DNA from: Lepidodermella squamata
Taxonomy: Eukaryota; Animalia; Gastrotricha
Direction: 5' to 3'
Length of the DNA: 64,000 bases
NCBI GenBank assembly: GCA_047495785.1
Contig: JBLDXI010000032.1
Coordinates: forward strand, 682,001 to 746,000
The notes beneath the pieces were generated by a model. That model did not search any database. It was not told where the DNA came from and saw only the letters and a list, made by a program, of their open reading frames with translations. Both the position numbers and the translations under genes were made by a program. Numbering within the stretch: the stretch's first letter is position 1; each line of letters opens with the position of its first letter. This document shows, one piece after another, positions 3,111 to 47,521 of this stretch.

Positions 3111-4221
3111 ATTTTCGCATTATCGAGTTGGAAACGAGATGATGAACTCTGAGTTTCAGTTTCAACTTTTTGATGTGAGCAGCGCGCGCGATGCTAAATT
3201 CGCGCGCACACCATCACATTGGTGCCACCTTTCTTTGCACAGATGACCATTTTTCATTTTGACAAAACAAATGTTCGATCTTTCTAAATTTCTAAATTCA
3301 AATTTATTTGTCCATCAGTCACAAAAATAATTGTTGTAAGACCTCAAGCACCATTGCGCCTACATCCTATGTCCATATAATTTCAGATAATGTACTTGAC
3401 TATTGATGTACTCGTAAGTAGCCACTTAGACACGCCAGATACCCATTTAAACCTTTAGAGGCAATAAATGAAGAGCAACTTGAGCGTACTGTTCGCTCAT
3501 AAAATAACGAAAATGTCATTTTTAATTGCTGTTATATGGAAACAAGTATCCTAAAATGCGCTGCCAGATGGATACATCGAGAATATCACTTGGCAGACAC
3601 CATTCCGACAACAAAAGGTGGCCGTTTATGTTTTAAAAAATTGGGCCGCTCACTTGTCTACAAGAATTATTAAAATTAATACAAAAATGTGATTATAATG
3701 GAATATTTACTGACAAGGTGTCACTGATGAAATGTCACTGCTGAAAAGTCTGACCACGATAAAATAATTTTTTAATTCATCTAATTAATAAAAAATTAAA
3801 TTTTCAATTTTCAAAATTATCATTTTTAATTAAATGAATAAAAGATTAGTTGATAAAACGATGTTTATATTCCGGTATTACTATGCTACTAAAATAAATA
3901 AAAAGAAAATTTTCGAATAATTCAGAAGAAAGAAGAAGAAACTCATGTTTTATTGAAAAAAACACATATATGGCAGATAAATCCTAACTGCTTGCCCTAT
4001 GACACATGAAGTTGAGAACTAAGAATAGCTATTGTTTCTAGTTTATATATTGTATTATATCAAGGTGCTAATGAGCTAGTGTGCTACTTGTTATTATACA
4101 AGTGGTAATGTAAAATTCGGCACGAGTCCTTAAGTAGGTCCTTAGGTATATTTTTTGTCATTTGTTTTCAAAAGATAATTATTACCGGCAGCTTTGATTC
4201 TAGTTTATTCTAGTCTAAATA

Positions 4222-5402
4222 TTATTTCAAAAGTTCCATTAATTTTTCACGTGGTGGTACTTTGGTTAGGTTGTGCCGAATAACTAGCCCGATTGCCGGA
4301 GTAGCAGGAACAAGAAAACGTTTCCCACTCCGATACACCTCGCGCAAGACGTTATCAGGATCTGGACGCTCTATCTTCTGGCTCACCAACACTGCACTTG
4401 GAACATTCAGCGTCGCTTCGTCGAGCAGTTTCAATATTGTGTTCATCTGCTTATGTTTCACCCTTGCAGAACCAACGGTTTTGATTGCCTCGACAATTTG
4501 ATTTTCCAACGTCTCCCAAACGATATCTTCTAACATCTGCCTCCCTGCCTCAGTCAATTTGCCGTCGCGGTCTCTTTCCGCACGTGAATACTTCCGCACG
4601 ATTATCTTGTTTAGATGTGGGAAGCCTCCAAGCACTGACCATACTGCCAACTTCAAGCCTACAGCATCTAGATCAGCGAATAGAACCTGAAATTCAGGAA
4701 TCCCCCACAGTTGGCCTTGATCGTAAGGCTCAACATTTATCACATCCTGTCTCCCCGTTTCCAAAAGTCCAGGAGGAAGCGTGTTCGGAGGGCCATCCAC
4801 AATGACGTGAAGCCCATACTTTTCTGTTAGCAAACGAACGGCACCAGTAAGCTTTGCGTAAGGTTCCTTATCCTCAGGCGACCGTTCGCTAGCACGAATC
4901 ACAAGAAATGGCGATTTTCCCGTCAGGCGCTTGAATAGGTGAATGGCCCACAGAGCGCGATATTCGTCGGCAAATGGCACTATCGTTACAGCACGCAAAG
5001 CTTCAAAAAGGATAGTGTCATGGTCAGTACCTGCAGGAATCTGTATAAAGAAGAAAAATGACAACAAATGAGCTCCCGCACCAAAAAAATGTTACTTACA
5101 ACGCATTTAACTACTCCGCGTTTACAGCTTGTGAACGTGTCTATCAAACACGACTTCCCAACACCTATGGCTCCAGTAACAACGATGTAGCTTTGATGGC
5201 CCCAGGAGTAGTTTTGAAGCTGTTCAAGTTCTTTCGTCCTAATAGAGCGCGGACGCAGATCAGGAGACTTCATCAGCAGACCAAGTGTCGGCAGCGAAGA
5301 GAAGCCAGCTATTCCTACAACACTTCCAACAGCCCATTTGATAGATGGTCGCTGAAAGACTCGCGACACCGGTGTCCAATATTGTCGCAGTTTCTTAAGC
5401 AT
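4222..5402 (-). CDS. P-loop NTPase family protein, copy 1 (intact, 2 exons, ~373 aa)
   Basis: Exon 1 5402-5100 (101 codons, hydrophobic N-terminal segment, Walker A GAIGVGKS); GT-AG intron 5099-5041; exon 2 5040-4222 in frame (LHVIVDG acidic motif). Confidence 0.85.
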
Positions 5403-5850
5403 AACAGCTCTAAAGGAAGCAGAAATTAGATACAGAGAAATCCATTAATAAGAATGGAAGAAATCGCCTTTTAAAACACGATATTTTAGGAAAGTTATTG
5501 TGCAGTTTTGTTTTATTAAGATGTTATATTTTCGTGCAACGTTTCGGCCTCAAAATGGCCATCGTCAGGCAATATCTTAGAATTCGAAAATCAAGACGCA
5601 GATATTTTGCGTATCGACTTTCGAATTCAAATGATTCGAAAACTCCGAAAAATCAGAATATTAATATTATTAACTCAGAAACTCATAAATTCATTACATT
5701 AAACTAAGTAAACTCAGAAAGAATAATATTTAAAGTTTCTATATGCAGTGGGATGTGGTCAGCCTCAGATCAGCTCTGATGGGGCTTCATCAACTTCTCG
5801 TAATTCTGTCTCCACTTCTGAATCTGATGGGCCGCTGGCCGATTTCGGAA

Positions 5851-8956: not shown

Positions 8957-9174
8957 AATTTCTTGGACGGAAAGGTAGGGACGCAGAGTTCCCCAGCGGA
9001 ATTGCCGGGACGGAAATATCACACAACCTTAAAAAATTAGTTGATATAACGACGTCTATATTCCGGTATTACTAAGCTACTAAAATAAATAAAATTAAAA
9101 TTTGAATTTTTTTTTGGTTTCCAAAAAATAATTATTTCCGGCAGCTTTGATTCTAGTTTATTCTAGTCTACATA

Positions 9175-10355
9175 TTATTTCAAAAGTTCCATTAATTTGT
9201 CTCGTGGTGGTACTTTGGTAAGGTTGTGCCGAATAACTAGCCCGATTGCCGGAGTAGCAGGAACAAGAAAACGTTTCCCACTCCGATACACCTCGCGCAA
9301 GACGTTATCAGGATCAGGACGCTCTATCTTCTGGCTCACCAACACTGCACTTGGAACATTCAGCGTCGCTTCGTCGAGCAGTTTCAATATTGTGTTCATC
9401 TGCTTATGTTTCACCCTTGCAGAAACAACGGTTTTGATTGCCTCGTCGATTTGATTTTCCAACGTCTCCCAAACGATATCTTCTAACATCTGCTTCCCTG
9501 CCTCAGTCAATTTGCCGTCGCGGTCTCTTTCCGCACGTGAATAGTTTGCGACAATATTCTCGTTTTGATGTGGGAAGCCTCCAAGCACTCACCATACTGC
9601 CAACTTCAAGCCTACAGCATCTAGATCAGCGAATAAAACATGAAATTCAGGAATCCCCCACAGTTGGCCTTGATCGTAAGGCTCAACATTTATCACATCC
9701 TGTCTCCCCGTTTCCAATAGTCCAGGAGGAAGCGTGTTCGGAGGGCCATCCACAATGACGTGAAGCCCATACTTTTCTGTTAGCAAACGAACGGCACCAG
9801 TAAGCTTTGCGTAAGGTTCCTTATCCTCAGGCGACCGTTCGCTAGCACGAATCACAAGAAATGGCGATTTTCCAGTCAGGCGCTTGAATAGGTGAATGGC
9901 CCACAGAGCGCGATATTCGTCGGCAAATGGCACTATCGTTACAGCACGCAAAGCTTCAAAAAGGATAGTGTCATTGTCAGTACCTGCAGGAATCTGTATA
10001 AAGAAGAAAAATGACAACAAATGAGCTCCCGCACCAAAAAAATGTTACTTACAACGCATTTAACTACTCCGCGTTTACAGCTTGTGAACGTGTCTATCAA
10101 ACACGACTTCCCAACACCTATGGCTCCAGTAACAACGATGTAGCGTTGATGGCCCCAGGAGTAGTTTTGAAGCTGTTCAAGTTCTTTCGTCCTAATAGAG
10201 CGCGGACGCAGATCAGGAGACTTCATCAGCAGACCAAGTGTCGGCAGTAAAGAAAAGCCAGCTATTCCTACAACACTTCCAACAGCCCATTTGATGGATG
10301 GTCGCTGAAAGACTCGCGACACCGGTATCCAATATTGTCGCAGTTTCTTAAGCAT
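9175..10355 (-). pseudogene. P-loop NTPase copy 2 with one premature stop
   Basis: Same exon structure as copy 1 (intron 10052-9994); TCA(Ser) changed to TGA at 9589-9591; otherwise in frame. Confidence 0.85.
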
Positions 10356-10536
10356 AACAGTTCTATCGGAAGCAGAAATTAGATGAGAATTAGATACAGA
10401 GAAATCCATTTATAAGATATAAGAATAGAAGAAATCGCCTTTTAAAACACGATATTTTAGCGAATTTGAAGCGGATTCTTTGCTGGTATAGCGATATCAT
10501 GGGAGATAATACTTCAAAAATAAGGCCAAGGAACCA

Positions 10537-10579
10537 TACACCGATGCGTTTCGGCTTTTATTGCCATCTTCAGGGTATA
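10537..10579 (-). ncRNA. Minimal type I hammerhead ribozyme (Penelope-like element type)
   Basis: Minus strand TATACC-CTGAAGA-T-GGC-AATAAAA-GCC-GAAA-CGCATC-GGTGTA: core CUGANGA and GAAA, stem II GGC/GCC, stem I UAUACC/GGUGUA, AUC cleavage triplet. Confidence 0.72.
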
Positions 10580-10752
10580 ACAAAGAAATTTTACAACATC
10601 TTAGTGGAACCAGTGAATCCACAATTATCTGATTGGTCGGGCGGTTTCAAGTCTGTGATTGGTTGGTTCAGAGCACGCGACACGCACCATTTAAATTTTT
10701 TTCTGCGATTGCATTTTCCATGATATAATAGAGTGTATTCGACTAAGAAGGC

Positions 10753-10825
10753 AGGACTGTGGCTCAGTGGACGAAGCATCTGATCAAGTATCAGAAGATT
10801 CCAGATTCGACTCTTGGCAGCTTCG
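10753..10825 (+). pseudogene. tRNA-Arg(ACG)-derived pseudogene
   Basis: TCTGA...TCAGAAGATTCCAGATTCGACTCTTGGCAG aligns with the eukaryotic tRNA-Arg-ACG body; anticodon loop and stems mutated. Confidence 0.72.
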
Positions 10826-10894
10826 AAATATTTTTAATCCAGAAGTAATACGAGTAAGGAAATCTAAAATTTAGTTGTACCCTACTCAGTCTCA

Positions 10895-10967
10895 GCCCGG
10901 TTAGCTCAGTCGGTAGAGCATGGGACTCTTAATCCCAGGGTCGTGGGTTTGAGCCCCACATCGGGCG
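10895..10967 (+). tRNA. tRNA-Lys(CTT), T-loop variant
   Basis: GCCCGGTTAGCTCAGTCGGTAGAGCATGGGACTCTTAATCCC...; B-box reads GTTTGA instead of GTTCGA, so possibly impaired. Confidence 0.85.
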
Positions 10968-11024
10968 GTTGTACACTTTTGGCCATTACGCTTAGTTTAG
11001 CTTTAAAATTGAGAAAAAAGCTAG

Positions 11025-11103
11025 CTCCTTGGCAGGGATTCGAACCCTGGTCTCCCGTGAGCAGTTAATCGCAGTTTCTGCGGTTCGAGTCTCCCGAAGG
11101 GCG
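11025..11103. pseudogene. Fused 3' halves of tRNA-Asp (minus) and tRNA-Asn-like (plus)
   Basis: Minus 11025-11059 reads CACGGGAGACCAGGGTTCGAATCCCTGCCAAGGAG (Asp 3' half); plus 11060-11103 reads GCAGTTAATCG...GGTTCGAGT (Asn-like). A deletion appears to have removed both 5' halves. Confidence 0.55.
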
Positions 11104-11178
11104 CTAGCTTTTCAAAAACTTACTGCTAGTTTTACGTCATATTTGAGAATGCCTTTTTTAATGTTGACTTGAATACAT

Positions 11179-11251
11179 CGGGGGTTAGCTCAAATGGCAG
11201 AGCGCTCGCTTAACATGCGAGAGGCAACGGGATCGGCACCCGTATCCTTTT
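11179..11251 (+). pseudogene. tRNA-Ala(AGC)-derived pseudogene (anticodon now AAC)
   Basis: TTAGCTCAAATGGCAGAGCGCTCGCTTAACATGCGAGAGG...GGGATCG is the Ala-AGC body; acceptor stem disrupted. Confidence 0.75.
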
Positions 11252-11460
11252 TAAAAGATTTTTTGCCACGAATCTTTTGCTTCAGCAGCTTAAATTTGGT
11301 ATTGAATGGCCATGAAAGCCGAAAGGGAAAATAGCTTAGTGATTAAGTGTCTGCTCAGTTAGCAGACGATTGAAGATTGAAGGTTCGATCCCCTAAGCCT
11401 TGCTCGATTTTTTGCGATAAGCAGTGAATTTTTGCAAAAACCTCATTTCGGAGCAAAACT

Positions 11461-11532
11461 TTCCCTGACCGGGAATCGAACCCGGGCCGCCGCGGTGAAA
11501 GCGCGGAATCCTAACCACTAGACCATCAGGGA
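11461..11532 (-). tRNA. tRNA-Glu(TTC)
   Basis: TCCCTGATGGTCTAGTGGTTAGGATTCCGCGCTTTCACCGCGG...GGTTCGATTCCCGGTCAGGGAA; complete cloverleaf. Confidence 0.95.
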
Positions 11533-11615
11533 TGTGTGAAGATAAATACTGAATGTGAAGATTATGCGATGAATTTTCAATAGCTTGTTGAAATTCAAAT
11601 GAAGAAAAACCTAGT

Positions 11616-11687
11616 GGGCCCGTTCGGGAATTGAACCCGAGACCTCTCGCACCCGAAGCGAGAATCATACCCCTAGACCAACGGGCC
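11616..11687 (-). tRNA. tRNA-Pro(CGG)
   Basis: GGCCCGTTGGTCTAGGGGTATGATTCTCGCTTCGGGTGCGAGAGG...; complete cloverleaf. Confidence 0.95.
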
Positions 11688-11756
11688 TGCGATAGAAAAC
11701 CCCCGTGGGCTTCTAACATGGCAATTAGGATAGGCCAATTACGGCGCAAAAAGGTA

Positions 11757-11829
11757 CGCCGAGACCCGGGATCGAACCAGGGACCTTTAGATCTTCAGTC
11801 TAACGCTCTCCCAACTGAGCTATCTCGGC
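11757..11829 (-). tRNA. tRNA-Phe(GAA)
   Basis: GCCGAGATAGCTCAGTTGGGAGAGCGTTAGACTGAAGATCTAAAGG...; complete cloverleaf. Confidence 0.95.
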
Positions 11830-12402
11830 TTGATGGCAAAAGGTAGTCACTTTCCGCTAAATTTCAATTTTCATAATCGCAGAAAAAATAAATGGCGCGT
11901 GTCGCGTGCTCTTTGAACCAACCAATCACAGACTTGAAACCATCCGACCAATCAGATAATTGTGGATTCACTGGTTCCACCAAGATCAATTAAGCTAATT
12001 TCAGATGTCAACAATCAGTACGGCCTCTCACCTCATTTTTGTTACCAGTTGCTGAAGATTATCAATTACAGAATTAGTTAAATTTACATCGTAACAATAA
12101 TAGTTCAGCATAGTTTAAGGAGAATGGCAATTCGCGAGGTTTGCATGGCCACTGGCGTTAAGGTCGCGGGCGTTAGGGTCCCGAGCTGAGGAGTCGCGAC
12201 CTATTTTCAGATTCAAATTATTTGGAAATTATTATTAAGAAATTCGGAAAAATAAGTATTAATTCTTGGCCGAAACGTCGTGAGCTGAATAGTCGCTGGC
12301 TGAATAGTGAATAGGCGTAAAAGTCGGGACGCAAAGTTCCCCAGCAGAATTGCCGGGACGGAAATGTCACACGACCAAAAAAATTAGTTGGTCAAATTAG
12401 TA

Positions 12403-12500
12403 GCTCAACATTTATCACATCCTATCTCCCCGTTTCCAATAGTCCTGAGTCGACAGAATTTGGAGGGCCATCCACAATGACGTGAAGCCCATACTTTTCC
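12403..12500 (-). pseudogene. Internal fragment of the P-loop NTPase gene
   Basis: Near-identical to ~4727-4823 (KYGLHVIVDGPP...ETGR.DVINVE). Confidence 0.75.
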
Positions 12501-12525
12501 GTACTTTTCCCATACTTTCCCATAC

Positions 12526-12647
12526 CATTCATCGTTTTGATATGTAGCAGTGATCAGTCAACAATTTGGATCAATAGTACAGTAGTACAGTGTGTAAAAA
12601 TAATAAAGATAATATTAAAAATTAAAACAAAATCTCAACAACTTCAT
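12526..12647 (-). repeat. LINE 3' UTR fragment
   Basis: Near-identical to 5997-6107. Confidence 0.75.
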
Positions 12648-13120
12648 ACGAAGCCGAAGTGCAGGACAGGCCGCCAGTGCCAATCAACGCGGTACAATCC
12701 GGCTAAGGAAATATCGAGCGGAACGGCATCACTTCCGGAAGGCCTCGATTTAAGCTCACCTCAGCTAACAAAGGAGCAGAGGCAACGACTCGAAGCTCTT
12801 CTTCGCGAGTACAGCGACATTTTCTCGAAAGGAAAGCGAGATTTGGGCAAGTGCAGCAAGGAACGGGAAGTCATCCGGCAAGAAATTGACGAGATGCTCG
12901 AAGCAGGCGTCGTCGAACCCAGCACGAGCGGATGGGCCAGTCCAATCGTTTTGGTCCCCAAAAAGGATGGTACGGTGAGGTTCTGTATCGATTTTAGACG
13001 GCTCAATTCTATGACAGAAAAGGATGCTTTTCCGTTACCCCGGATCGACGACACCCTTGACGCCCTGTCCGGAGCAGCCTGGTTCAGCGGGATCGACCTT
13101 GCATCCGGCTACTGGCAAGT

Positions 13121-15170
13121 GGGTCGCGTGTTTTTGATTCACGTCGACCCAACCTAGACGGCGTCTCAATGGTTCGGGATCAGCCAAGGGATGTGCACCG
13201 CAAATGACACGAATGGCCCGATCTTGAGTTGATTGCAATTTGGCTAGCGAACTCGGCGCTGCCTGACCCAGCGTGATGTCACCGTAATTCAAATGACTAT
13301 TCGTAACACAAGCCCGTTGGCCATCATAATCGCCGTCTTTCTATCGACAAACTTGACGGCCAAGCGAAGGGCGTATAGCCCTCTTCTCGCCTTGCTCTTG
13401 GCACTCCTTATTTGTTTCTTGAAGTCTGTCGTCGATGATAAATCCGAGAGTTATCATTTCATTTGACGGTTGGACAACCGCATCGCCGATAGTGATAGCG
13501 AAGTTTGGAGCCGAAGGAACGGCGCACTTGAGTATCATAAATTGAGACTTCTTACCATTGACAAGTAGAGAATTGTTTGCCAACCACTTGCAGACCCGGT
13601 TCATTTCATTTTGTAATTCATTGTAATTCAATTCATTGATATTACGGCTTGCAAAGTAGATCGTGATGTCGTCGGCGTATTGTTTTATTTTGCAATGCGT
13701 AACAACCGACGGTAGCTCGTTTACGTAAACAGTGAACATCAATGGGCCGAGAACGGATCCCTGCGGCACTACATGATGTATTGGTTCAAAGGATGAAAGT
13801 TCGCAATTGACCTTTGTAGCCTGTCTTCGATTGCCCAGATAACTCCGCAAAAGTCGAATCGCTTGTTTCGTCAGGCCTGCACTTCGGAACAATTCAAGAA
13901 TACCCTCGTGATTGAGAGTATCGAAGGCTTTCGAAAGATCAATCGACATGGCTCCAACGACGAACCGCCTTTCTTCGGTTTTGGCCTGAAGTCACCAATG
14001 ACTCGCCAGATTTTTCGCGGATCTCGCCCGGCATCAGAAATTCGCTTTCGGTATTTTGCCCGTCTTTCTTTCCGACGCAGTCTTTGGCGTTGACGTCGGG
14101 AGAGATTTGGGTCCATATTCGTTCGATGTTTCTTCCTCATGTCAGGTTTTTTGACGATCAATGGCGCAACTTCGTTTAAAACCTCTAGTAGATAACATTT
14201 AAGTTTCTGCCATAGACCTTCGCAATCTAGCGCATCGCAATCCAAATTGGCGAGTTTCTCTTGTAACCGGCAATTCAACCTACCGAGTCAACACCACGCA
14301 GATCACGAATAAGGCGAACGTTCGATCGGCTAGGTTTCACGTCGCCTTTATCACGAATAACCATGGCAGTCCCGTAATGGTCGCTGAGACCAACAACTGA
14401 GCCACTCTCTGCTATTTCGAATACAGGAATGTTGGACCAATAGTGATCCAGGCATTTGCCTGATGCAGGTCGAGTAACTACGTTCGAGTAGGCTGGTTGC
14501 ATACCGAAGTCGCCGAAGACCTCCCGTATAGCCGCCGCCACTTTCGGGGTTAACAAAAATTCCAATTGAAGTCACCTGTGATTACATGATAATCGGCTTA
14601 GGTAGACATGCATTCTGTCAGAAAGTGTTCGAGCTCGTCCGCATCGCTATTAGTAGGGCTACGATAGATCGCAGTAAGAGCCAATCGCTTCCCGGACGGT
14701 AATTGGATGACGCATTGTAAATTTTCGATTGTTTTAGAGGGTATAATTCGCTCGGAAAATACTTTGTAGGCCTTATAGATAAGCACTCCGCCGCCGCCAG
14801 CTCTTTTCTGATTCCGGCCTTTCCAGAAACATTCGTAACCTAGATACGGGTCTTTGAGACCGGGATTAGGCGAAAACTCGTCCTCGACGTGGCTAGGGGT
14901 GCAACCATCGGGTATTTTTGTTTCACCCAGAAGTATAGCCATCGGGCGGATGACCTCTGCGAATTCTGCTAATTCAGGCAGTTTTTCGACAGTCAGCAGT
15001 CCATTAAGATTAGCGTGAAAGAGAGCGTGAAGGTCAGATGAGAAGCGAGACTCGACTAGATCTGTATGTTCGAGTGTCGGCGGAGCCATTTCCGCAACAG
15101 TTTCCGGGGGACCGGGATTGGGCGCGATTCCAGATATCAATAGAAATATCATAATCGTTGCTCTTTGGCG
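13121..15170 (-). mobile_element. L2/CR1-clade LINE ORF2 (APE endonuclease and RT), frameshifted, inside the Gypsy pol
   Basis: APE motifs HANLNGL, LGETK, GGGGVLIY, AIYRSP, LDH, LSDH; RT motifs IDLSKAFD, PQGSVLGP, QYADD. Confidence 0.9.
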
Positions 15171-15704
15171 CGTAAGCTGACGAAACGGATTACGAGAATT
15201 GAAGGAGAAGAAAATTGCGTACCACTCATGGGTGATGGTATCAAGGCTTCGACCGTCATGAATCGAAGGGGCACCGTTGTCACAGACGCCGTTACCATGG
15301 AAACCGTTGCTAAGCATACCGCAGGCTCTGCAAAACCGCGTGCTTCAAAATCTTCATAAGGATGTACACGCAGGACACCTGGGATTTGACCGCGCACTGG
15401 ATCGAGTTCGTCAGCGGTTCTACTGGCCTAAGATGGAAGAGACCATCGCCGACTATGTTCGTAATTGTTTGGAATGTCAACAGCGGAAGGCTCCAATTGC
15501 TCACCCGGTTGCACCTTGCACCCTTGCAGCCGATTGATACAACCGAACCAATGGCGTTGGTAGCCTGGGATGTCATGGGCCCGATCCACCCTACATCAAA
15601 GAAAGGAAACAATTATATTTTATTGATTGGCGACTATTTCACGAAGTATATAGAAGGGTATCCACTAAAGAATATTACCGCAGAAACGGTAGCCGATTGT
15701 CTAT

Positions 15705-16818
15705 TACATAATCTTCCCGCATGTGGTGCGTGACAGTGCGGGTGAATGAGTGCGGGATAATCTCCCGCACAATCCCGCAGCAAGTCCCGCACCATCGCGC
15801 AGTAGTGCGGGATCGATGCGTGATACAGTGCGTGATAGGTTCCAGCACCATCGCGCACTGATCCCGCACTATATCCCGCACTATCCCGCACTGTTCCCGC
15901 ACAAGCCTCCCGCACTATCCCGCACAGGACGTCTGAACTATCCCGCACAAAAACATCCTTAAAAATTACAAAACACAAGAGCGGCACCGGGATCCGAACT
16001 CGGTACCCAAGCGACGCTAGCGCCGCCAAACCAACTACACCACCGACTCCGCTGTATCGAGAGAGCCGTTTTTGGAATATAAGCCGATTGCAAAGTTACG
16101 GGATGGAAAATAGTTAAAAACAGCTAGAGTCAACATTACTGAGAAACAGGTGTGGCAGTAAAGAGAATAGAAATGGCGTTTGGATTTGACACGCCAATTT
16201 GACACACTTTGCACGCAATTTCACAACGAACCAAGTATCGCCGGACAATAAATCTTATATCGGCGGATAGCCCTCGAAATTCTGTAGAAACTACCAGCGG
16301 CCGCTGTACAAATTCGCCGCCAATCGGGTCGATATCGGCTTCGGAAATCGCGATTTTGGCCTAGGCCGCACGCCAATTTGACACACTTTGCACGCAATTT
16401 CACAACGAACCAAGTATCGCCGGACAATAAATCTTATATCGGCGGATAGCCCTCGAAATTCTGTAGAAACTACCAGCGGCCGCTACAAATTCGCCGCCAA
16501 TCGGGTCGATATATCGGCTTCGGAAATCGCGATTTTGGCCTTGGCGGCACGTTAAAATGGTAACATGTTTGACATTGATATTGAAGTTTCCCGTGAATAT
16601 ATCCCGCTTATCGACTCCCGCACTCTTTTTGCGGGACCCTTTTTTTGTAGGTGCGGGTTTCAATGCGGGACTGTCCCGCACGCCGTCCAGCAGTTTATGC
16701 GGGCCTGTCACGCAGTGTGTGCGGGACAGACGCGCACACTTTCACCTTTCACGCACTTCATGCGGGTCTGTCCCGCACTCGTCACGCACTGTCCCGCACT
16801 AGTGCGGGAAGATGGTGT
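15705..16818. mobile_element. Non-autonomous TIR element inserted in the Gypsy integrase
   Basis: TIR core ATCTTCCCGCA / TGCGGGAAGAT; many TCCCGCAC subterminal repeats; two ~179-bp tandem units (16190, 16369); integrase reading DCL...YLDFVFRWG resumes across it. Confidence 0.82.
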
Positions 16819-18212
16819 ATATTTAGATTTCGTGTTCCGATGGGGGCGCAGTCAAGTCCTTTTGAATGACAATGGAAGGAACTTTGAAGCCAAGCTGATA
16901 AATGATATTTGCGCCATTCTGAGAACAAAGCATGTGCATACTACTCCATATCACGCTGTGGGCAATGGATTTATCGAGCGTATGAACAAAACAGTTCAGG
17001 ATATTATAGTCATGTATCTAACGCCAGCCACTCAATTCGACTGGGATGTTTACCTGCGATCTGCGTTGTTCGCGTATAACACAAGCACACACGAATCAAC
17101 GACGTACTCGCCATTCTACCTGATGACGGGACGGCATGCAAAGCTACCAATAGATGTTGCCATTCAAGAACCAGCACTCAGCGCCGAAATGCAACAGCGC
17201 AGTGAGTACGCGCAAAAAGTATACGCGCGCCTACGCACCGCGTTCAAAGAAACCCGAGATAAGCTGGCGCAGGCTAGGGCTAAGCAGAAGCGGCAATACG
17301 ACCAGGGTAGCAAAAACAGCGAGCCGTTTCAAGAAGGGGAACTGGTGTGGCTACATAACCCAGTAGTAAAGAAGGGGCAATCAGCTAAGTTCCACTGTGC
17401 GTGGCGCGGACCATATACTGTGGTAGCGCGCTACGGAGCGTTGAATTATGCTATCAGGCTTTTCAACGGTAGCGGGAAAGAAAAAGTAGTGCACCGGAAT
17501 CGGCTAAAGGAATATTGTGGCGATGCGCCAACACAGTTGGATAAAGTTACTACGTATGAGCTGGAGCAACAACAGCAGCGAACGGCAAAAGGCATCGCGC
17601 AAACCACGATTCAGAAAAAGAACCGCACACTACAGCTACTACCCGCGGATGATTATGAATGGGATTATGGCGGAGGCACAGAACTAATCTCAGCACCACA
17701 AGCACAGCCAGCGCCGGTGGTTCATAACGGCGCAAGAACGGTGAGCGCCGAGGAAGTACAGCGAATACTGGCCTATCAACCAGTAGTTCGAATCAAGCCC
17801 GCACAAATAATACAACCCGTTACGTATAGTCAGGCACTTAGTCAGAGCCTGGAGCCGGCAATCAGCACGCACACATCAGACGGAGCACCCAAGTACCAGC
17901 GACACAACGCAGGCCGCTAAGAAATCGGAAAATAGTAGCAACAGCAGCGCAAAACGGGAACTGCCAGATCGAGCAGCCAGGAGAGAGATTTGTTATAAGG
18001 AAAAACGAATTAATCAAGCCGAATACCGGGAAAACAAATGGAACACGAAGATAAGTGAAAGGCAGACCACCGAGAATGCATCAAAGTATTCAATCAAAAG
18101 ATGAATCGTCAGCAAGGCGTCTTTAAATAAAAATGTCCATGGAAAAGAGCCGGCGTGTAATCTTTTGATTGAAAGTACGTAAACACAGTTAAAAGGGAAA
18201 CGCATCGACGTT

Positions 18213-21154: not shown

Positions 21155-22481
21155 TTAATTCAAAAGTTCCATTAATTTTTCACGTGTTGGTACTTTGGTT
21201 AGGTTGTGCCGAATAACTAGCCCGATTGCCGGAGTTGCAGGAACAAGAAAATGTTTTCCACTCCGATACACCTCGCGCAAGACGTTATCCGGATTTGGAC
21301 GCTTCAAATTTTCTGGCAGGGACAGCAGACCGGAGAGACGCTACTTCCAACGGGCTTTCATCCAGCAGTTTCAGAATTTCCCTTGTCTGAGGATACATTC
21401 GCTTGGAATTATCCACGGTTTTGATTGCCTCGACAATTTGATTTTCCAACGTCTCCCAAACGATATCTTCTTTTTCCCTGCCTCATTCAGCGTCGTTTCG
21501 TCGAGCAGTTTCAATATTGTGTTCATCTGCTTATGTTTCACCCTTGCAGAACCAACGGTTTTGATTGCCTCGACAATTTGATTTTCCAACGTCTCCCAAA
21601 CGATATCTTCTAACATTTTCTTCCCTGCCTCAGTCAATTTGCCGCTGCGGTCTCTTTCCGCGAGTGAATAGTTTGCGACAATATTCTCGTTTTGATGTGG
21701 GAAGCCTCCAAGCACTGACCATACTGCCAACTTCAACCCTTCAGCATCTAGATCAGCGAATAAAACATGAAATTCAGGAATCCTCCACATTTGGTCTTGA
21801 TCGTAAGGCTCAACATTTATCACATCCTGTCTCCCCGTTTCCAATAGTCCAGGAGGAAGCGTGTTCGGAGGGCCATCCACAATGACGTGAAGCCCATACT
21901 TTTCTGTTAGCAAACGAACGGCACCAGTAAGCTTTGCGTAAGGTTCCTTATCCTCAGGCGACCGTTCGCTAGCACGAATCACAAGAAATGGCGATTTTCC
22001 AGTCAGGCGCTTGAATAGGTGAATGGCCCACAGAGCGCGATATTCGTCGGCAAATGGCACTATCGTTACAGCACGCAAAGCTTCAAAAACGATAGTGTCA
22101 TGGTCAGTACCTGCAGGAATCTGTATAAAGAAGAAAAATGACAACAAATAAACTACCGCAGCAAAAAATGTTACTTACAACGCATTTAACTACTCCGCGT
22201 TTACAGCTTGTGAACGTGTCTATCAAACACGACTTCCCAACACCTATGGCTCCAGTAACAACGATGTAGCGTTGATGGCCCCAGGAGTAGTTTTGAAGCT
22301 GTTCAAGTTCTTTCGTCCTAATAGAGCGCGGACGCAGATCAGGAGACTTCATCAGCAGACCAAGTGTCGGCAGTAAAGAAAAGCCAGCTATTCCTACAAC
22401 ACTTCCAACAGCCCATTTGATGGATGGTCGCTGAAAGACTCGCGACACCGGTATCCAATATTGTCGCAGTTTCTTAAGCAT
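21155..22481 (-). pseudogene. P-loop NTPase copy 3, chimeric and frameshifted at the 3' end
   Basis: Intron 22178-22121; partial duplication of EDIVWETLENQIVEAIKT followed by a divergent segment at 21300-21415. Confidence 0.82.
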
Positions 22482-22596
22482 AACAGCTCTATAGGAAGCA
22501 GAAATTAGATGAGAATTAGATACAGAGAAATCCATTAATAAGAATAGAAGAAATCACCTTTTGCTACACTGTTTTGCTACATAACATGGCAGTATG

Positions 22597-24990
22597 TGGC
22601 CTCGTGGCCATGTGGTCACATTCAAAAGAATTTTCGCTATTACAACAACAAATAATCGTGACGTATCGGCGGAATGAATCAAAATCCGGTCAATATGCCA
22701 TATATACATTCTGAGGTGAAACTAATTAATTTTGCATAAAAATTATATGATTTTAGCGTAAATGAGTTGAATATTCGAAAAGACATTATGCCCAGCCATA
22801 TGACGCATTATTAAACTAACTTTTGTGGAGTTTTTTCTTGCGGTAAATCTGCATTAGTGCCGAAAAAGTACCGATATAATCGTATTATGAGTAAAATTAA
22901 AATAAATTTCTGAGTTTTCTGAGTTAAAATTGTTATCTATTTCTGAGTTTCGAAAAATAATTGGAAAAATATGTGGTCAGACTTTTCAGCAGTGACCTTC
23001 AGCAAATGAGGGTCAAATAAGCAGTTAATTTCTAGCAGTGACAAATGAGCAGTGACATTTGAGCTGCGACATTTGCGCAGTGACAAATCCTCAGTGACAA
23101 GCCAGCAGTAATTGTTGATAATTTATCCTAAATTTTTCCAAATTTATTATCTCTATCTCGGTGACATTCTAGCGGGGACATTTCATCAACAGAATTTCCG
23201 CCATTGTGTTTGAGGTTGTAAGTCGAAAAAAATCCGCACGCTGATTGGTGAGGTTGGCTCGTATCCATGACTCCGCCTTGCTACTTGATCGTGCGATCTA
23301 TATAATTTGTGGCTTTTATTATTTTTATGGAGGCCGTATCGTAGCACGCGTTTCCAACAAATGCGTAAAACCATTCATAAAAAGATATTTTTTGCAAACA
23401 TTTTATGGATCGCACGATCAAGTAGCAAGGCGGAGTCATGGATACGAGCTAACTGACCAATCAGCGTGCAGATTTTTTTCAACTTACAACCTCAAACACA
23501 ATGGCCGTATTTAGCAGGGAGCGCTGGAAGTTGAGCTCAAAATCAATCAGATTCGTCGTTCGCCTCGTTAACCTGGTTCTCCTCGTTCCCTTCGTTTACT
23601 TCGTCTTTGTCGTCGATATGGTCGAAACATTCAATTTCCCATGTGTCAACCCATGTGGTTTCGATGAAATTTCGGCCCTCCGAAGCATCAACCTCGAATT
23701 CGGCACAAAAAATGGCGAAGATTGCACGCCAAATGCGAAAAATTTCGCGTTTCGAGCAAGACGCTTGAAGCACACCAAAGCATTTCAGCGCCAGTTTACG
23801 AGCTTCCTTCTTCACAGGTACCTTGAAAGATCATGCATCAAGTGATTTATGCAAAAGGTGACGAGAGTTCCGGAAGTTGGCAGGGTTTTGCCGTCTTTGT
23901 GAGCGTCAATAAACAGGCGGCTCAGGTTGATCACGTAACTTCGCAGATTTTTCTCACAAAATGTAATCACCACGGCATGAAACTCTGCGAAACAGCAATC
24001 GATTACCACCACTCTCGGCATTTTCGCCGCCCTGTGAGCTCGTTCCACCGCCGATTTCCAGGTCGTTAAAAAACAGGGAAACATAATTTTTTATTTGCTG
24101 TCCAATTCAAAATCAATGAGTACGAAAATATTCCATAGCTTAAAAAATGGGTCCAAAGATCACTCGCAAAACATCAGTAAAATTTAGGCTTGTTTTGGAG
24201 AATGTTCAGAAAATCAAGGTGAACTTGTAAACTAATAAAAGAAATACAGGTAACCGAGGGATACAAATATGAAGCCCTAATATTTTACCTGGAATTTTAC
24301 CTGGAACTTGATTTAAAAAAAAGTTGGAGTGAGTGCCTGCATTTTTGGCCTTAAACTTGAATACAAGAGCCACACTCGATTTCAACAATGAAAAATCTTT
24401 CGGTTTACAAATTTGTCACGTCTTAGATACTTTTAGAAGGTACTTAAAAGGTAGGTCAATAGACAAAAATGCTGGATGTTTACCTTCAAAAAGAAAGCGA
24501 TTCTGTCGCCAGTCTGCTCAGCAGAAATCAGCTCACCCACCGGGTAACCCACAGGCTTGTCATCAACCGTTATAGGCAGAAATACGTGTAAAAAAACGCG
24601 CTTGCCCGTTTCATAGTCAAGTTTCCATATACCACCTGTCGCATCCAACACACAAATGATGTATCCATGCTTGACTGCTTCAAAGAATAATTCAATTGAC
24701 AAGCCGAAGTAAAGAACTAGACCCATCGGATAATCCTAATAGAATCAATATTAAAAGCTGCATATTCACAAGTTAATAGTTACTCACAATTGACTGTCGA
24801 ATGTAAGGTTCTGGCATTTTGTTCATCCCGCAGTTTAATGAGATCAAAGCGGGGATCAGCATCGGCTCGACCATCTATAAAACATTGTATTCATAAAAAT
24901 TAATTTTCAAACCCAAGTTCCATCTTTTTCGACTGAATTTTCTGTAGTGCGGTACCTCTGGTACCTCTGTCGTGGGCATTTGAGCAAACA
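22597..24990. repeat. Segmental duplicate of 1-2355 including the left part of the MULE (from 22972)
   Basis: ORFs 23812-24084 and 24433-24726 are identical to 1156-1428 and 1781-2074; flank outside the TIR is also shared; ends in a deletion junction at 24990. Confidence 0.9.
23202..23503. mobile_element. CATTGTG-TIR palindromic MITE with 2-bp TSD
   Basis: ~100-bp inverted arms; TSD GC; empty site TTCAGCTGTATTT at ~841-853 in the first copy. Confidence 0.88.
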
Positions 24991-25598
24991 TATTGTGTTC
25001 ATCTGCTTATGTTTCACCCTTGCAGAACCAACGGTTTTGATTGCCTCGACAATTTGATTTTCCAACGTCTCCCAAACGATATCTTCTAACATTTTCTTCC
25101 CTGCCTCAGTCAATTTGCCGTCGGCGTGGTAGGTAAATAGCCCACAGGGCGCGATATTCGTCGGCGAACAATGGCACTATCGTTACAGCACGCAAGGCTT
25201 CAAAAACGATAGTGTCATGGTCAGTACCCGCAGGAATCTTTAGAAAAGAGAAAAATGACAACAAATAAACTACCGCAGCAAAAAATGTTACTTACAACGC
25301 ATTTAACTACTCCGCGTTTACAGCTTGTGAACGTGTCTATCAAACACGACTTCCCAACACCTATGGCTCCAGTAACAACGATGTAGCGTTGATGGCCCCA
25401 GGAGTAGTTTTGAAGCTGTTCAAGTTCTTTCGTCCTAATAGAGCGCGGACGCAGATCAGGAGACTTCATCAGCAGACCAAGTGTCGGCAGTAAAGAAAAG
25501 CCAGCTATTCCTACAACACTTCCAACAGCCCATTTGATGGATGGTCGCTGAAAGACTCGCGACACCGGTATCCAATATTGTCGCAGTTTCTTAAGCAT
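24991..25598 (-). pseudogene. P-loop NTPase copy 4, internally deleted and 3'-truncated
   Basis: Exon 1 intact; exon 2 jumps from EYRALWAI to DGKLTEAGKK and is cut at QMNTI. Confidence 0.82.
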
Positions 25599-28500
25599 AA
25601 CAGCTCTATATAGGAAGCAGAAATTAGATGAGAATTAGATTCAGAGAAATCTACTATTATTAAGAATAGCAGAAATCGCCTTTTAAAACACGACATTTTA
25701 GCAAAGTAATTGTGCAGTTTCGAGCCATTTTGTTTTATTAAAACGAGTTTTATTAAAGCGAGCTGAATGCAATGGCCGCGCCCTTTTTTCTTAATCTATC
25801 TCAGTTTTCGCGATGTGATATACCCAAAATCGGTAAAAAGAGCCTTATAATGCGGTTCCTTGCCGTTGAAATCCACCGCTGGGAACAAGAAGACGGCGGT
25901 GCAACGTGGTTTTCTGCTGTCATTGAGGATGCTAATGATATATCAAGCGGCCTTGATAAATTGTTGCTCAAGTTTGAGTCTGCGGATCAGAGAAACGCAC
26001 CCTTTTATGGACGAAATGCAATGAAACTAGCTGTTTCACGATGAAAAGGGCAGTGGTATTATGTAAATAGACGGAAAGCCGGGCGAAAACATGTCGAATT
26101 TAATGACATGGATGTTGTTGATGCGGAAGACACATTTCCTTCCTTCTTTACCTTTGATAATCTCTCATCGTGATGTTGTGATACAACGTCGTCCGCAGTG
26201 ATGCCGTAGTTAACTCCTCCCGACTAATCAAAGCTGATCTCAAATGCCTTACCACTGTTATCATCAAAATTGTCTCGCAGAACATGTTAATATCAAAAAG
26301 AAAGAATGCAAGGTATTTTCGATTATAATTATTTAGCCGCTCAATTTATTCCGTTTACTCTGTTCGTGACGCCGTCATGTTCCTTACTAAGGATACTAAG
26401 GGTTACTAAGGGTTCACAAGTGAGCATAGCTTGGTCTTAGTAAGGACTGCCATCCTAATGATCATAACTATGGACACCCACTCTACGCCGCGTCATTCAA
26501 GGTGCACATATCTTTTATCTGAGATCAGATCCTTAGATCGCTCAGTCTGAAACGGCGAAGTCTGAGTAAGGATTGTCGAGTAAGCCATTCCTACCAAGCA
26601 TACCAGTGTCACCGCGTCCTTACTTGGAAGCCATCTTGCTAAGGATGTCTTGCTTAGTAAGGACATCCTTATTAAGGAATTCCTAAGCAAGATGGCTTTT
26701 AAGTAAAGAGAGCGCTTAGCATCTCCTTTACTCATACCTTATGCATCCTTAGCATCCATAGCATGGAAAGTCGACATCGCTAGGCTATGAACAGCCGGTC
26801 ATTTGCACCATTCAGATCAAGTTGAGTGTTTAACAAAACGTCATGTAAACTCTAACATAATTGGCAGCATCCGGCGCGCGGCGTGAGTCGTTAAGAGTGA
26901 GAATTTGGCATCATTTTCGGCGAAAAATTCATTGATATCACTGGATCCGCCGAAGATTTGAGGACAGCCGATGACTGAGACAACGCTTAGAGACTGATAA
27001 CCAAGATCTAATTGAAGAGTGCTCATCTGACCAGAGGATGAGATCTAACTCAGCAGGTATGGCAGAAGGGAGTCACTCCTGCTCAAGAGTTAGTATGGCA
27101 ACACCGGCATTTTCTTGTTTTAGTGTCAACTTATTTTTACGTCTCCTAGTAGATTCACTCATTTGACCGCCCATTTGACCGCTGAATTGTTTGCTAATAT
27201 TATAAATGTTCCGAATATCCCGAAACTCCATTTTCTAGACGGAATGTATCCATAGCAGCAGCAAGTGAAAAACCACGGTGACTCCCCAAAAAAGTCACGG
27301 TAACTAAGAAGTATTAACTCTGCTTTACAAGAAAGCAATGAGAGACAGCGTTTTTGACGGGTGATTTGAAGGCATGGACACCCTTGAACGATCGTGGCGC
27401 AGCATAAGGTCGTAACTCAGCCCGATCCAGCGGAGGAAAGAGATGATTTTATATTTCGTGCATAACTTGGGCTAGGAACATCGTTTTTTCAAGCTGAAAA
27501 CAGGCATCGGCGTGTCTGTTGCAGCACTATCACCGAGATGCGTTGAGATAGTAAGAAACACATGAATCGCGACATAATTCTGGTAATTAGTTCCGCCGCA
27601 GTACATCTATTATATAAAGTGCGCGTGATTCATCGGCCACATAATTGCAAAGAATGTGCTGCGAAGTAGATGCGTTACCGGCGCAAGCGTATTGTTTAGG
27701 GCATAAATGGCTCCAGATGCGCACAAATCGAAGCCGCCACGAAGCTGCTGCTCATAAACAACATTTTCATCCCAACAGACGCATCCTTTTCTTCCTTTTC
27801 TTCTTATTTTTACCCAGAACACACCATTTTATCTTCATAAGCCTGCCAGTTTAGACAAAGAAAAAGTCACTTTTGTCGCTTTAAGACCCATTTTCAGAGG
27901 ATTCAGTTGAATTATATATTTCCAGAATCAGCACGACAAGCCCTGTCTAGCCATGTAAATTTCAATGCTTTATCGCTAAAATTAGTGTTTGAAATCACGA
28001 AAATGGTTATTTTTATTGATGTATTGTCAAATTTTGCCCAATCATCCTAGGAAAATAACGAAAATAAGTTGCAGATTAGACTAGTTTCCTTTACTCCAAA
28101 GAATTTTGCAGTTGATAAATTGGCATTTTGATAATTAATTTGATAATTAATTAAATATCCTAATCCTGTTCCATGCGTAACCATTGGCCGATTTTTACGT
28201 TTAGAATGCTCACTAAAAGTTGCGGTTGGCGTACAGCTGACCGATGAATTGTCTAGTTTTTGCCAGATGGTTCCTCCTCGAGTGGGGTTGTCATGTGGCT
28301 ATGTTACCCCACTTCGTCTCGATCTTTTACCGGGGTGAACCGATTGATCTCATCGCCGGTTTCGGACCGGGGTATTTGGGAAACACTTCCCTTCATCGAA
28401 TTTCAAAAGAACACGATTATTCTTATCTTGCATCGCATTAGCGTGAATTCCCAACCTGGAACTCGACTAATCACCTTTGAAATCAATCTGTCTGGATCAA

Positions 28501-34178: not shown

Positions 34179-34669
34179 TTAGTGGTTACATCTACATGAT
34201 CCACATTTAGGAAAAAAGACGCCGGCTGCCTTATTAAATGCTTGAAATGCTATCAGAAAAACACTAACAAAGGTGCCGTCACCGGTGATAAAATGCGGAA
34301 TTACGGGGGAGAAGTTGCGCGCCGGAGAACTGGCGGTGCGCGTAGCGGCTACAACGCGAAAACGCGCGGCATCGCGCAGCACGCTTTTCCGTAGCAAAAA
34401 AATTTTTATTTAAAAAAAATTATTAATATAATAAAATACAAATATTTTTAAAAGGATATTCAATTTTGTGCATAAAATTTTGCGGTAGCACGCGATTTTT
34501 CCAACGCGCGAGGCGGATTTTCGGTTTTCAAAAGAACACCCTGTATTACTATGCTACTAAAATTTTCATTTTCCTAATTTCCGAAAAATTCTTATATATT
34601 TTATAAATTTGTTTTCAAAAAAAAATTTATTTCCGGCAGCTTTGATTCTAGTTTATTCTAGTCTAAATA

Positions 34670-35865
34670 TTATTTCAAAAGTTCCTTTAATTTTTCACGT
34701 GGTGGTACTTTGGTTAGGTTGTGCCGAATAACTAGCCCGATTGCCGGAGTAGCAGGAACAAGAGAATGTTTTCCACTCCGATACACCTCGCGCAAGACGT
34801 AATCCGGATCTGGACGCTCCATCTTCTGGTTCACCAACACTGCACTTGGAACATTCAGCGTCGTTTCGTCGAGCAGTTTCAATATTGTGTTCATCTGCTT
34901 ATGTTTCACCCTTGCAGAACCCACGGTTTTGATTGCCTCGACAATCTGACCCTCCAAAGTCTCCCAAACGATATCTTCTAACATCTTCTTCCCTGCACCA
35001 GTCAATTTGCCGTCGCGGTCTCTTTCCGCACGTGAATAGTTTGCGACGATATTCTGGTTTTGATGTGGGAAGCCTCCAAGCACTGACCATACTGCCAACT
35101 TCAAGCCTACAGCATCTAGATCAGCGAATAAAACATGAAATTCAGGAATCCTCCACATTTGGTCTTGATCGTAAGGCTCAACATTTATCACATCCTGTCT
35201 CCCCGTTTCCAATAGTCCAGGAGGAAGCGTGTTCGGAGGGCCATCCACAATGACGTGAAGCCCATACTTTTCTGTTAGCAAACGAACGGCACCAGTAAGC
35301 TTTGCGTAAGGTTCCTTATCCTCAGGCGACCGTTCGCTAGCACGAATCACAAGAAATGGCGATTTTCCAGTCAGGCGCTTGAATAGGTGAATGGCCCACA
35401 GAGCGCGATATTCGTCGGCGAACAATGGCACTATCGTTAAAGCACGCAAAGCTTTAAAAACGATAGTGTCATGGTCAGCACCCGGAGGAATCTGTATAAA
35501 AGAGAAAAATAGCAAAAAATGAACTACCGCAGCAAAAAATGTTACTTACAACGCATTTAACAACTCCGCGTTTACAGCTTGTGAACGTGTCTATCAAACA
35601 CGAATTCCCAACACCTATGGCTCCAGTAACAACGATGTAGCGTTGATGGCCCCAGGAGTAGTTTTGAAGCTGTTCAAGTTCTTTCGTCCTAATGGAGCGC
35701 GGACGCAGATCAGGAGACTTCATCAGCAGACTTCATCAGCAGACCAAGTGTCGGCAGCGAAGCGAATCCAGCTATTCCTACAGCACTTCCAACAGCCCAT
35801 TTGATAGATGGTCGCTGAAAGACTCGCGACACCGGTATCCAATATTGTCGCAGTTTCTTAAGCAT
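34670..35865 (-). pseudogene. P-loop NTPase copy 5, frameshifted with Walker A K->N
   Basis: 13-bp tandem duplication at ~35716-35741 shifts exon 1; GVGNS replaces GVGKS; intron 35549-35492; exon 2 open. Confidence 0.82.
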
Positions 35866-36307
35866 AACAGTTCTATAGGAAGCAGAAATTAGATACAGAT
35901 AAATCTATTAATAAGAACAGAAGAAATCGCCTTATAAAGACGATATAATAGCAACGTAATTGTGCCATATCGAGCCATTTCGTTTTAATATGATGTTATA
36001 TTTTCGTGCGACGTTTAGGCCACGAAATGGCCATCGTCAGGCAGTATCTTAGAATTCGAAAATCGATACTCTGGTATGGGAGAAAACAAAACAACCCATG
36101 AGTTTAATAGGAAAAAATGTAACACAATTGTTACAAAGTGAGGAACGTTCTTCTTAAGACATGAGAACCAAGAGTTAACAAACCAGAATTTTCAACGAAT
36201 TTGTGTACAGTTGCCGCATCGGCAAGAACCGTGGAGAACCTCCAGCTATAAATTTAATGGAACAGCCTTCTAATATTGAGCAAAAATCCAATTAATCTTG
36301 AAATGTT

Positions 36308-46113: not shown

Positions 46114-47521
<1,408 letters not shown>

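What the first reader, a model, noticed from the sequence alone, without database searches (positions are those of the whole stretch)
10597..11987. Candidate mobile tRNA array: a TIR element whose only cargo is tRNA genes
Seen: ~113-bp inverted repeats with AA on both flanks enclose about nine different tRNA-derived units and no plausible protein gene. Glu-TTC, Pro-CGG and Phe-GAA are intact, Lys-CTT is nearly intact, and Arg, Asp, Asn, Ala and one unassigned remnant are decayed. The unit sits in a TE-rich region beside a Penelope-type motif. Inference: a non-autonomous DNA transposon has captured and moves a multi-isotype Pol III cassette (a Pack-type element for tRNAs). This could alter tRNA dosage or supply TFIIIC-bound insulators against silencing. 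I do not know of this arrangement in animals. An alternative is that a tRNA cluster was copied once into a resident MITE.
Basis: partly seen in the sequence, partly recalled or inferred. Interest (0 to 1): 0.88.

Follow-up and report, generated by a model that had tools for sequence, protein, structure and literature searches.

The report
Transposon family carrying tRNA gene clusters
A 1.4-kb piece of jumping DNA with no enzyme of its own is filled with nine different transfer-RNA genes (three intact, one nearly so), and raw sequence data show its ends at many other genomic sites, several joined to the same tRNA load, so tRNA gene blocks very probably spread as transposon passengers in this tiny animal.

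Summary
Inverted arms of 110 bp (104/113 columns identical) enclose nine tRNA-derived units, each followed by a Pol III-type T-run, and no protein gene. Glu-TTC, Pro-CGG and Phe-GAA are intact, Lys-CTT has one B-box change, and five units are decayed. One correction: the termini are probably 10600/11984 (CTT...AAG) with a possible AT duplication, not AA. The new evidence is from contigs of the probable source run. The arm is a dispersed family: at least 14 contigs leave it into unrelated flanks. Five contigs that differ from this copy join the arm to the Arg unit, one at about 12 times haplotype depth, and five join it to a Phe-side-like spacer. Best reading (0.72): a non-autonomous cut-and-paste element captured part of a host multi-isotype tRNA cluster and multiplied, and its cargo now decays copy by copy. 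Expression, selection, the transposase and any empty site are untested. The scan noted six similar elements elsewhere in this genome, but I could not compare their sequences. The host is probably the gastrotrich Lepidodermella squamata (circumstantial). I found no published eukaryotic DNA transposon with such cargo: a new variant of Pack-TIR.

The parts
10600..11984 (.). Whole element, 1385 bp, termini CTT...AAG; AT lies on both flanks (10598-10599, 11985-11986), a possible 2-bp target duplication
10600..10710 (+). Left terminal inverted repeat. The outer ~70 bp is the family core; it has a short hairpin at 10604-10622 and two GATTGGT motifs
10753..10825 (+). Decayed tRNA-Arg-like gene (25.7 bits, several broken pairs, B-box changed), then T5
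   Evidence: isotype from own knowledge
10895..10967 (+). tRNA-Lys(CTT), all stems paired, T-loop C56 changed to T, then T4
11026..11060 (-). 3' half of a tRNA-Asp-like gene, then T6
   Evidence: isotype from own knowledge
11061..11104 (+). 3' half of a tRNA-Asn-like gene, fused back to back with the Asp half at the anticodon loop, then T4
   Evidence: isotype from own knowledge
11179..11251 (+). Decayed tRNA-Ala(AGC)-like gene whose anticodon now reads AAC (ARAGORN calls Val), 36.9 bits
   Evidence: isotype from own knowledge
11325..11405 (+). Decayed tRNA-like unit with an AGT loop and a 7-nt internal duplication, tentatively Thr, then T6
11461..11532 (-). tRNA-Glu(TTC), intact
11616..11687 (-). 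tRNA-Pro(CGG), intact
11757..11829 (-). tRNA-Phe(GAA), intact
11875..11984 (-). Right terminal inverted repeat
10505..10591 (-). Flank, not part of the element: hammerhead-like motif belonging to a separate high-copy repeat

Best explanation
This is one copy of a dispersed family of non-autonomous cut-and-paste DNA transposons (Pack-TIR type). Shown: 110-bp inverted arms, no coding capacity, many unrelated insertion flanks for the arm, and the same arm-Arg and arm-Phe-side junctions in other, diverged copies. Inferred: an ancestor of the family lost its interior and took up about 1.2 kb of a host cluster of mixed tRNA genes as DNA (spacers and Pol III terminators kept, no CCA or poly-A tails), probably by template switching during gap repair or replication. 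An unidentified transposase acting in trans then moved and multiplied the loaded element. Each copy now loses genes and suffers internal deletions on its own, while a subset of genes stays intact and could be transcribed from its internal A/B boxes wherever it lands. The tRNA genes are mostly passengers, and the element works as a vehicle that scatters tRNA gene blocks.
For: Arms and cargo. Family (run X1): summed contig depth jumps from 1,329 to 10,104-14,336 at position 10600, while a perfectly matching flank contig has depth 40.6. Loose ends lie before 10598 (3 contigs), 10599 (5) and 10600 (6) with only 0.50-0.78 agreement and median lengths up to 230, so the flanks are many and different. 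Cargo link: record 7 (depth 116.8; 8 substitutions, 6 gap letters) bridges arm, spacer and Arg unit. Three contigs of depth about 50 join the arm at 10668-10669 to the Arg region with different skips (87, 105, 121). Record 6 (253 nt, depth 572) holds arm 10608-10689, and a joint of the same depth links 10689 to 28 nt like the Arg 3' end and trailer. Five contigs continue behind 10710 with a consensus 25/30 identical to this copy's Phe-side spacer and 10/30 to its left spacer. Context, unverified: six notes of inverted-repeat-bounded tRNA arrays of 0.9-1.9 kb and tandem 20- and 27-gene tRNA cassettes elsewhere in this genome, and a mixed cluster without inverted repeats at 61.2-62.7 kb of this window. 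Mechanistic precedent: multicopy Pack-TIRs in animals (PMC8277862).
Against: No listed contig spans outer flank, arm and a tRNA gene for another locus. No empty site or proven target duplication: AT/AT could be chance. No transposase partner was found. Contig depth is not a copy number, the DNA was probably whole-genome amplified, and X1 is probably the sample the window came from. Arm depth is more than ten times the depth of the proven Arg junctions, so most arms may carry other interiors or no tRNA. The three right-hand genes are perfect while others are heavily decayed, which uniform neutral decay does not explain.
Confidence: 0.72

Rival explanations
1. Selected cargo: the family persists because intact tRNA genes help it or the host (TFIIIC/Pol III barrier against silencing, or added tRNA dosage), so it is a specialised mobile tRNA cassette and not a passenger load.
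For: Glu, Pro and Phe have all stems and both boxes intact next to heavily decayed neighbours. Earlier notes report three or four intact genes in other elements and sizes from 0.9 to 1.9 kb, which may mean repeated capture (unverified).
Against: Five of nine units are dead, including B-box lesions. Other copies show different Arg lesions (table 3). The TIR-less cluster at 61-62.7 kb also mixes intact and dead genes, so pseudogenes may have been captured as such. No expression data: no RNA run holds the stretch.
Confidence: 0.12
2. One or a few captures into a common MITE-like family by transposition-independent gap filling; the few loaded copies then arose by segmental or tandem duplication, or are alleles, and did not transpose.
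For: Most animal Pack-TIRs are single-copy and arise this way (PMC8277862). Arm depth far exceeds cargo-junction depth. The probable host is about 3% heterozygous (PMC11660948), and local duplication of small-RNA blocks is noted elsewhere in the genome (unverified).
Against: At least five distinct arm-Arg junction contigs with different deletions, one at about 12 times haplotype depth. Record 7 has 10 events in 141 nt and depth 117, more than one allele should give. The left flank contig that matches this locus perfectly has only depth 40.6, so the flank was not co-amplified.
Confidence: 0.12
3. The arms are not transposon ends but a dispersed host boundary or regulatory repeat placed in inverted orientation around tRNA clusters, or the structure is an amplification chimera.
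For: The termini match no superfamily I could test. The arm holds two CCAAT-like motifs. Multiple displacement amplification can make inverted chimeras (PMC11660948).
Against: A sharp shared outer boundary with variable flanks is what insertion gives. The arms differ at 9 columns, and the differences recur as variants in other contigs (AA insertion at 10669, 3-nt gap at 10694), whereas a chimera would give identical arms. The second cluster in the window has no such arm. The genome paper found no chimeric contig.
Confidence: 0.04

Closest known systems
Pack-TIRs of animals and Pack-MULEs of plants (Tan et al. 2021, PMC8277862)
   Same: TIR ends around captured host DNA, no transposase, multicopy forms spread by later transposition.
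   Different: The cargo here is a block of nine different Pol III genes that fills the interior. The word tRNA does not occur in that paper's main text. The parental copy and superfamily are not identified here.
TRIMp3 elements Helenus, Ajax and Cassandra (Kojima 2024, PMC10886601)
   Same: Non-autonomous mobile elements that carry small-RNA-gene sequence with a Pol III promoter.
   Different: Those are LTR retroelements with one tRNA- or 5S-derived segment in each LTR, a PBS, a PPT and 4-5 bp duplications, and are thought not to encode functional RNA. This element has inverted ends and several complete genes on both strands.
MER6 MITE carrying a SINE-derived V domain (PMC6887750)
   Same: An animal non-autonomous DNA transposon that spread a captured non-coding sequence.
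   Different: One SINE fragment, not intact tRNA genes or an array.
Bacterial long tRNA gene arrays on plasmids, conjugative elements and phages (PMC8421152)
   Same: Multi-isotype tRNA blocks spread by mobile DNA, often cryptic, sometimes co-opted.
   Different: Prokaryotic, co-oriented operons moved by horizontal transfer. Here the genes are separately terminated Pol III units on both strands inside a eukaryotic TIR element.
tRNA-derived SINEs, and elements that target tRNA genes (Ty3, Dictyostelium retroelements, Dada, Starships; own knowledge apart from the title)
   Same: Link between mobile DNA and tRNA genes.
   Different: SINEs have one tRNA-like head and a tail; targeting elements insert at or next to tRNA genes. 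This element contains the genes.

Membership tests
Pack-TIR (cargo-carrying non-autonomous TIR element) | TIR sequence on both sides of the cargo | tested here: met
Pack-TIR (cargo-carrying non-autonomous TIR element) | Interior is captured host DNA, not transposase | tested here: met
   tRNA genes with spacers and T-run terminators, no coding ORF
Pack-TIR (cargo-carrying non-autonomous TIR element) | TIR belongs to a dispersed family with unrelated flanks | tested here: met
   at least 14 contigs with loose outer ends, agreement 0.50-0.78
Pack-TIR (cargo-carrying non-autonomous TIR element) | Loaded form is multicopy, each copy with its own flank and target duplication | tested here: inconclusive
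   arm-cargo junctions recur in at least 5 + 5 contigs, but no listed contig spans flank, arm and gene, and duplications of other copies are not visible
Pack-TIR (cargo-carrying non-autonomous TIR element) | Parental copy of the cargo, free of TIRs, is identified | not testable with these tools
   rest of genome not searchable; the cluster at 61-62.7 kb holds other isotypes
Pack-TIR (cargo-carrying non-autonomous TIR element) | Target-site duplication at this locus | tested here: inconclusive
   2-bp AT at 10600/11984 is the only duplication longer than 1 bp with complementary termini, and it could be chance
MITE in the strict sense | Short (usually under about 800 bp; own knowledge), homogeneous, non-coding | tested here: not met
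   1385 bp; interiors heterogeneous, depth falls after about 70 bp of arm
ISL2EU (PHIS) | Fixed target A|AT|T (PMC4482050) | tested here: not met
   this site is C-AT-C, and most other copies do not extend through AT
Tc1/mariner, piggyBac, hAT | TA, TTAA or 8-bp target duplication | tested here: not met
   none at any symmetric boundary from 10596 to 10605
CMC (CACTA/Mirage/Chapaev) | 2-4 bp duplication of variable sequence, and family-type termini or transposase | tested here: inconclusive
   a 2-bp variable duplication would fit (PMC4482050 gives 2-4 bp for CMC); termini are CTT, not the CAC I recall for EnSpm; no transposase available
TRIMp3 (Helenus) or tRNA-SINE | Direct LTRs with PBS and PPT, or a single tRNA head with a 3' tail | tested here: not met
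   ends are inverted; no long direct repeat inside the element; nine units on both strands
Functional tRNA genes | Transcribed by Pol III and processed | not testable with these tools
   no RNA run on record holds the stretch; intact structure only for Glu, Pro, Phe

The most novel reading that the evidence does not exclude
A DNA transposon family specialised in carrying working multi-isotype tRNA gene cassettes. It captured different tRNA clusters more than once, keeps a subset of genes intact under selection (Pol III/TFIIIC shielding or tRNA dosage), and is the route by which this genome seeds new tRNA clusters and perhaps its large tandem tRNA arrays.
Probability: 0.2. Interest if true: 0.86.

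Novelty: new variant of a known kind. Interest (0 to 1): 0.67.

Why it matters
How eukaryotic tRNA genes reach new places and turn over so fast is usually put down to local duplication, conversion and retroposition (own knowledge). A dispersed cut-and-paste family that moves blocks of different tRNA genes is a further route, for which I found no published eukaryotic case in six targeted full-text searches. With tens of copies of different age in one genome it is also a ready test set: one can ask whether element-borne tRNA genes are transcribed, whether their boxes are conserved more than spacers, and whether Pol III genes protect a transposon from silencing. It also warns that tRNA gene counts in such genomes include transposon cargo.

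Tried and rejected
No second copy of arm or cargo in the window. The arm pattern gave 0 hits in metagenome contigs as a 23-mer and 3 as a 19-mer, all chance: no extension, no tRNA. It gave 0 hits in viral contigs. Runs X3 and X24 hold nothing on the stretch and X2 only the hammerhead flank. A host search with the carboxylesterase ORF gave only 30-39% identical hits and no lineage. Six paper searches for tRNA-carrying DNA transposons found no case; the library lacks most subscription journals and Repbase, so this is weak evidence of novelty. Rejected: the AA duplication; ISL2EU, Tc1/mariner, piggyBac and hAT membership on target-site grounds; a SINE or TRIM origin; an amplification chimera. My early guess of a nematode host was dropped in favour of a gastrotrich on circumstantial grounds. 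I laid contigs only on 10440-10890 and left the intact tRNA genes out on purpose, because I know them to be close to human tRNA genes and the tool states that it turns such stretches away. As a result, cargo to the right of the Arg unit was not tested for copy number.

Full report
1. Observation. The structure is in the sequence as described. BLAST finds one inverted pair, 10598-10710 and 11875-11986, 92% over 115 columns, E 5e-42, and no other copy in the window. The terminal 18-mer occurs twice against 0.05 expected. Between the arms ARAGORN and Rfam find Lys-CTT, Glu-TTC, Pro-CGG, Phe-GAA, a weaker unit at 11179-11251 and an Arg-like unit below the gathering score. A B-box scan shows three more T-arms. 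From my own knowledge of animal tRNA sequences these are the 3' halves of divergent Asp and Asn genes fused at their anticodon loops, and a Thr-like unit; the unit ARAGORN reads as Val-AAC is an Ala-AGC gene with a changed anticodon. All nine units are followed within 3-10 nt by four or more T, against a background of 0.12-0.20 per site, and are spaced 42-83 bp apart. They are therefore genomic Pol III gene units copied as DNA, not retrocopies. There is no coding ORF.

2. Boundaries. In contigs of run X1 the summed depth rises from 1,329 to over 10,000 at position 10600, and other copies leave the arm before 10598 (3 contigs), 10599 (5), 10600 (6) or 10601 (record 5). The best boundary is 10600/11984 (CTT...AAG), where AT lies on both sides, the only duplication longer than 1 bp with complementary termini. 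The target is not a fixed AT, since most other copies do not extend through it. ISL2EU (A|AT|T, PMC4482050), TA, TTAA and 8-bp duplications are not met. A variable 2-bp duplication, or none, remains possible. The superfamily is unassigned.

3. Is it a family? I laid contigs on 10440-10890 at 85% likeness, leaving out the intact tRNA genes because they resemble human genes. 159 contigs of X1 lie on these 451 bases. A contig that matches the flank perfectly has depth 40.6, and several single-looking contigs have depth 38-54. Depth at single arm positions is 10,000-12,700, over 200 times that level. Overlapping short contigs inflate such sums, so I read this only as tens of elements. At least 14 contigs have loose outer ends with low mutual agreement (0.50-0.78; 44 more loose ends not shown), so the arm sits in many unrelated places. 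The outer 70 bp is the common core and depth falls further in, so interiors vary.

4. Is the cargo linked to the arm elsewhere? Yes, in part. Record 7 (depth 116.8) runs from the arm through the spacer into the Arg unit with 41 and 94 letters on either side of the junction, and differs from the window by 8 substitutions and two insertions. Three contigs of depth 49-53 join the arm at 10668-10669 to the Arg region with skips of 87, 105 and 121 (the letters between are not known). Record 6 (253 nt, depth 572, about 12 times haplotype depth) has arm 10608-10689, and a joint of the same depth links 10689 to a 28-nt match to the Arg 3' end with its trailer. On the other side, five contigs continue behind 10710 with a consensus 25/30 identical to this copy's Phe-side spacer. 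Record 3 is a diverged arm (9 substitutions) with 51 letters of foreign outer flank and 16 inner letters, the median length of that group, so it is probably such a copy at another site. Variants in the Arg region include reversions to the standard B box (10805 A>G in 7 contigs) and new lesions (10803, 10807, 10810), so copies decay independently. Limits: no listed contig spans flank, arm and gene; the proven Arg junctions sum to depth 844, under a tenth of the arm depth; X1 is probably the source sample.

5. Context. The element lies in a repeat-rich region, beside a hammerhead-like motif that is itself high-copy and near LTR-retroelement RT and integrase fragments. A second mixed cluster (iMet, U1 snRNA, Leu, Gly, Gln, Ala, Leu and two remnants) at 61.2-62.7 kb has no inverted arms, so mixed clusters exist here without the element. 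Earlier notes of the scan, unchecked, list six more inverted-repeat-bounded tRNA arrays of 898-1898 bp on other pieces of this genome, one of 1393 bp with three intact genes, and tandem arrays of 20- and 27-gene cassettes. These are leads; I could not compare sequences. One note names the gastrotrich Lepidodermella squamata as probable host, another a nematode. The gastrotrich fits circumstantially: that assembly is 122 Mb in 157 contigs with 43% GC, from a study that also sequenced C. elegans (102 Mb), at 83-fold coverage and 3% heterozygosity (PMC11660948). The scan has 1992 windows on 147 pieces, the window is 37-50% GC, the sister run X24 holds 101 Mb, and depth near 45 is about half of 83. 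I did not test the identity directly.

6. Mechanism. Shown: arms, cargo, dispersed arm family, recurring arm-cargo junctions, independent decay. Inferred: capture of a host tRNA cluster segment into an emptied TIR element by template switching, as proposed for animal Pack-TIRs (PMC8277862); movement by a transposase in trans; later deletions such as the Asp/Asn fusion (a strong hairpin, z -4.96). I give this 0.72. Selected cargo gets 0.12: three neighbouring genes are perfect while five are dead, which is unexplained but also seen in the TIR-free cluster. Capture without later transposition gets 0.12, and a non-transposon or artefact reading 0.04.

7. Comparison and novelty. It works like a multicopy Pack-TIR and meets the structural tests I could run; the parental copy and per-copy duplications are untested. 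It is not a SINE or a TRIMp3 element such as Helenus (PMC10886601). The nearest functional parallel is the mobile long tRNA arrays of bacteria and phages (PMC8421152). Six full-text searches found no eukaryotic DNA transposon carrying a tRNA gene array, within a library that omits most subscription journals and Repbase.

8. Verdict. Real, multicopy, and a new variant of a known kind. Interest 0.67. Function is untested.

Noticed in passing
window 61252-62745: Second mixed small-RNA cluster without inverted arms: iMet-CAT, U1 snRNA (61440-61599, 108 bits), Leu-TAG, a Ser-like remnant, Gly-TCC, Gln-CTG, Ala-CGC, Leu-CAA (-) and one more remnant, downstream of a RING/IBR gene.
   Followed up: partly
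window 11016-11112: Back-to-back Asp and Asn 3' halves fold as one long hairpin (z -4.96), and both are followed by the same short trailer before the T-run.
   Followed up: partly
window 11179-11251: Ala-type body with an AAC (Val) anticodon; probably decay, but it would be a mistranslating tRNA if made.
   Followed up: no
window 4161-5489, 9114-10460, 21484-22562, 25130-25740, 34608-35952: Five copies (88-97% alike) of a 1.35-kb repeat. Hammerhead-like cores lie at its end at about 5568 and 10573 (- strand), and a similar motif follows the 35-kb copy; weak P-loop hit in an ORF at 9939-10409. Possibly a non-autonomous Penelope-like element.
   Followed up: partly
window 10505-10591: The hammerhead-bearing segment is itself high-copy in run X1 (summed depth about 4,000), and a 37-nt match occurs in a wastewater metagenome (X2).
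   Followed up: partly
window 12537-17920: Fragments of LTR-retroelement reverse transcriptase (both strands) and integrase, with short tandem repeats at 15841-16800.
   Followed up: no
window 23200-23505, 38065-38530, 39590-40789, 51603-51785: Other inverted-repeat or palindromic elements, including a 185-bp pair at 98% identity (39752-39936 / 40405-40589) nested inside a second inverted pair.
   Followed up: no
window 11822-11837 and 61717-61724: Phe-GAA and Leu-TAG genes share the same short upstream motif (CCATCAA) directly before the mature 5' end.
   Followed up: no
window 46838-60641: Compact host genes: RIO kinase, FYVE coiled-coil protein, a 520-aa carboxylesterase with no relative above 39% identity, RING/IBR ligase, and several ORFs without Pfam hit.
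   Followed up: partly
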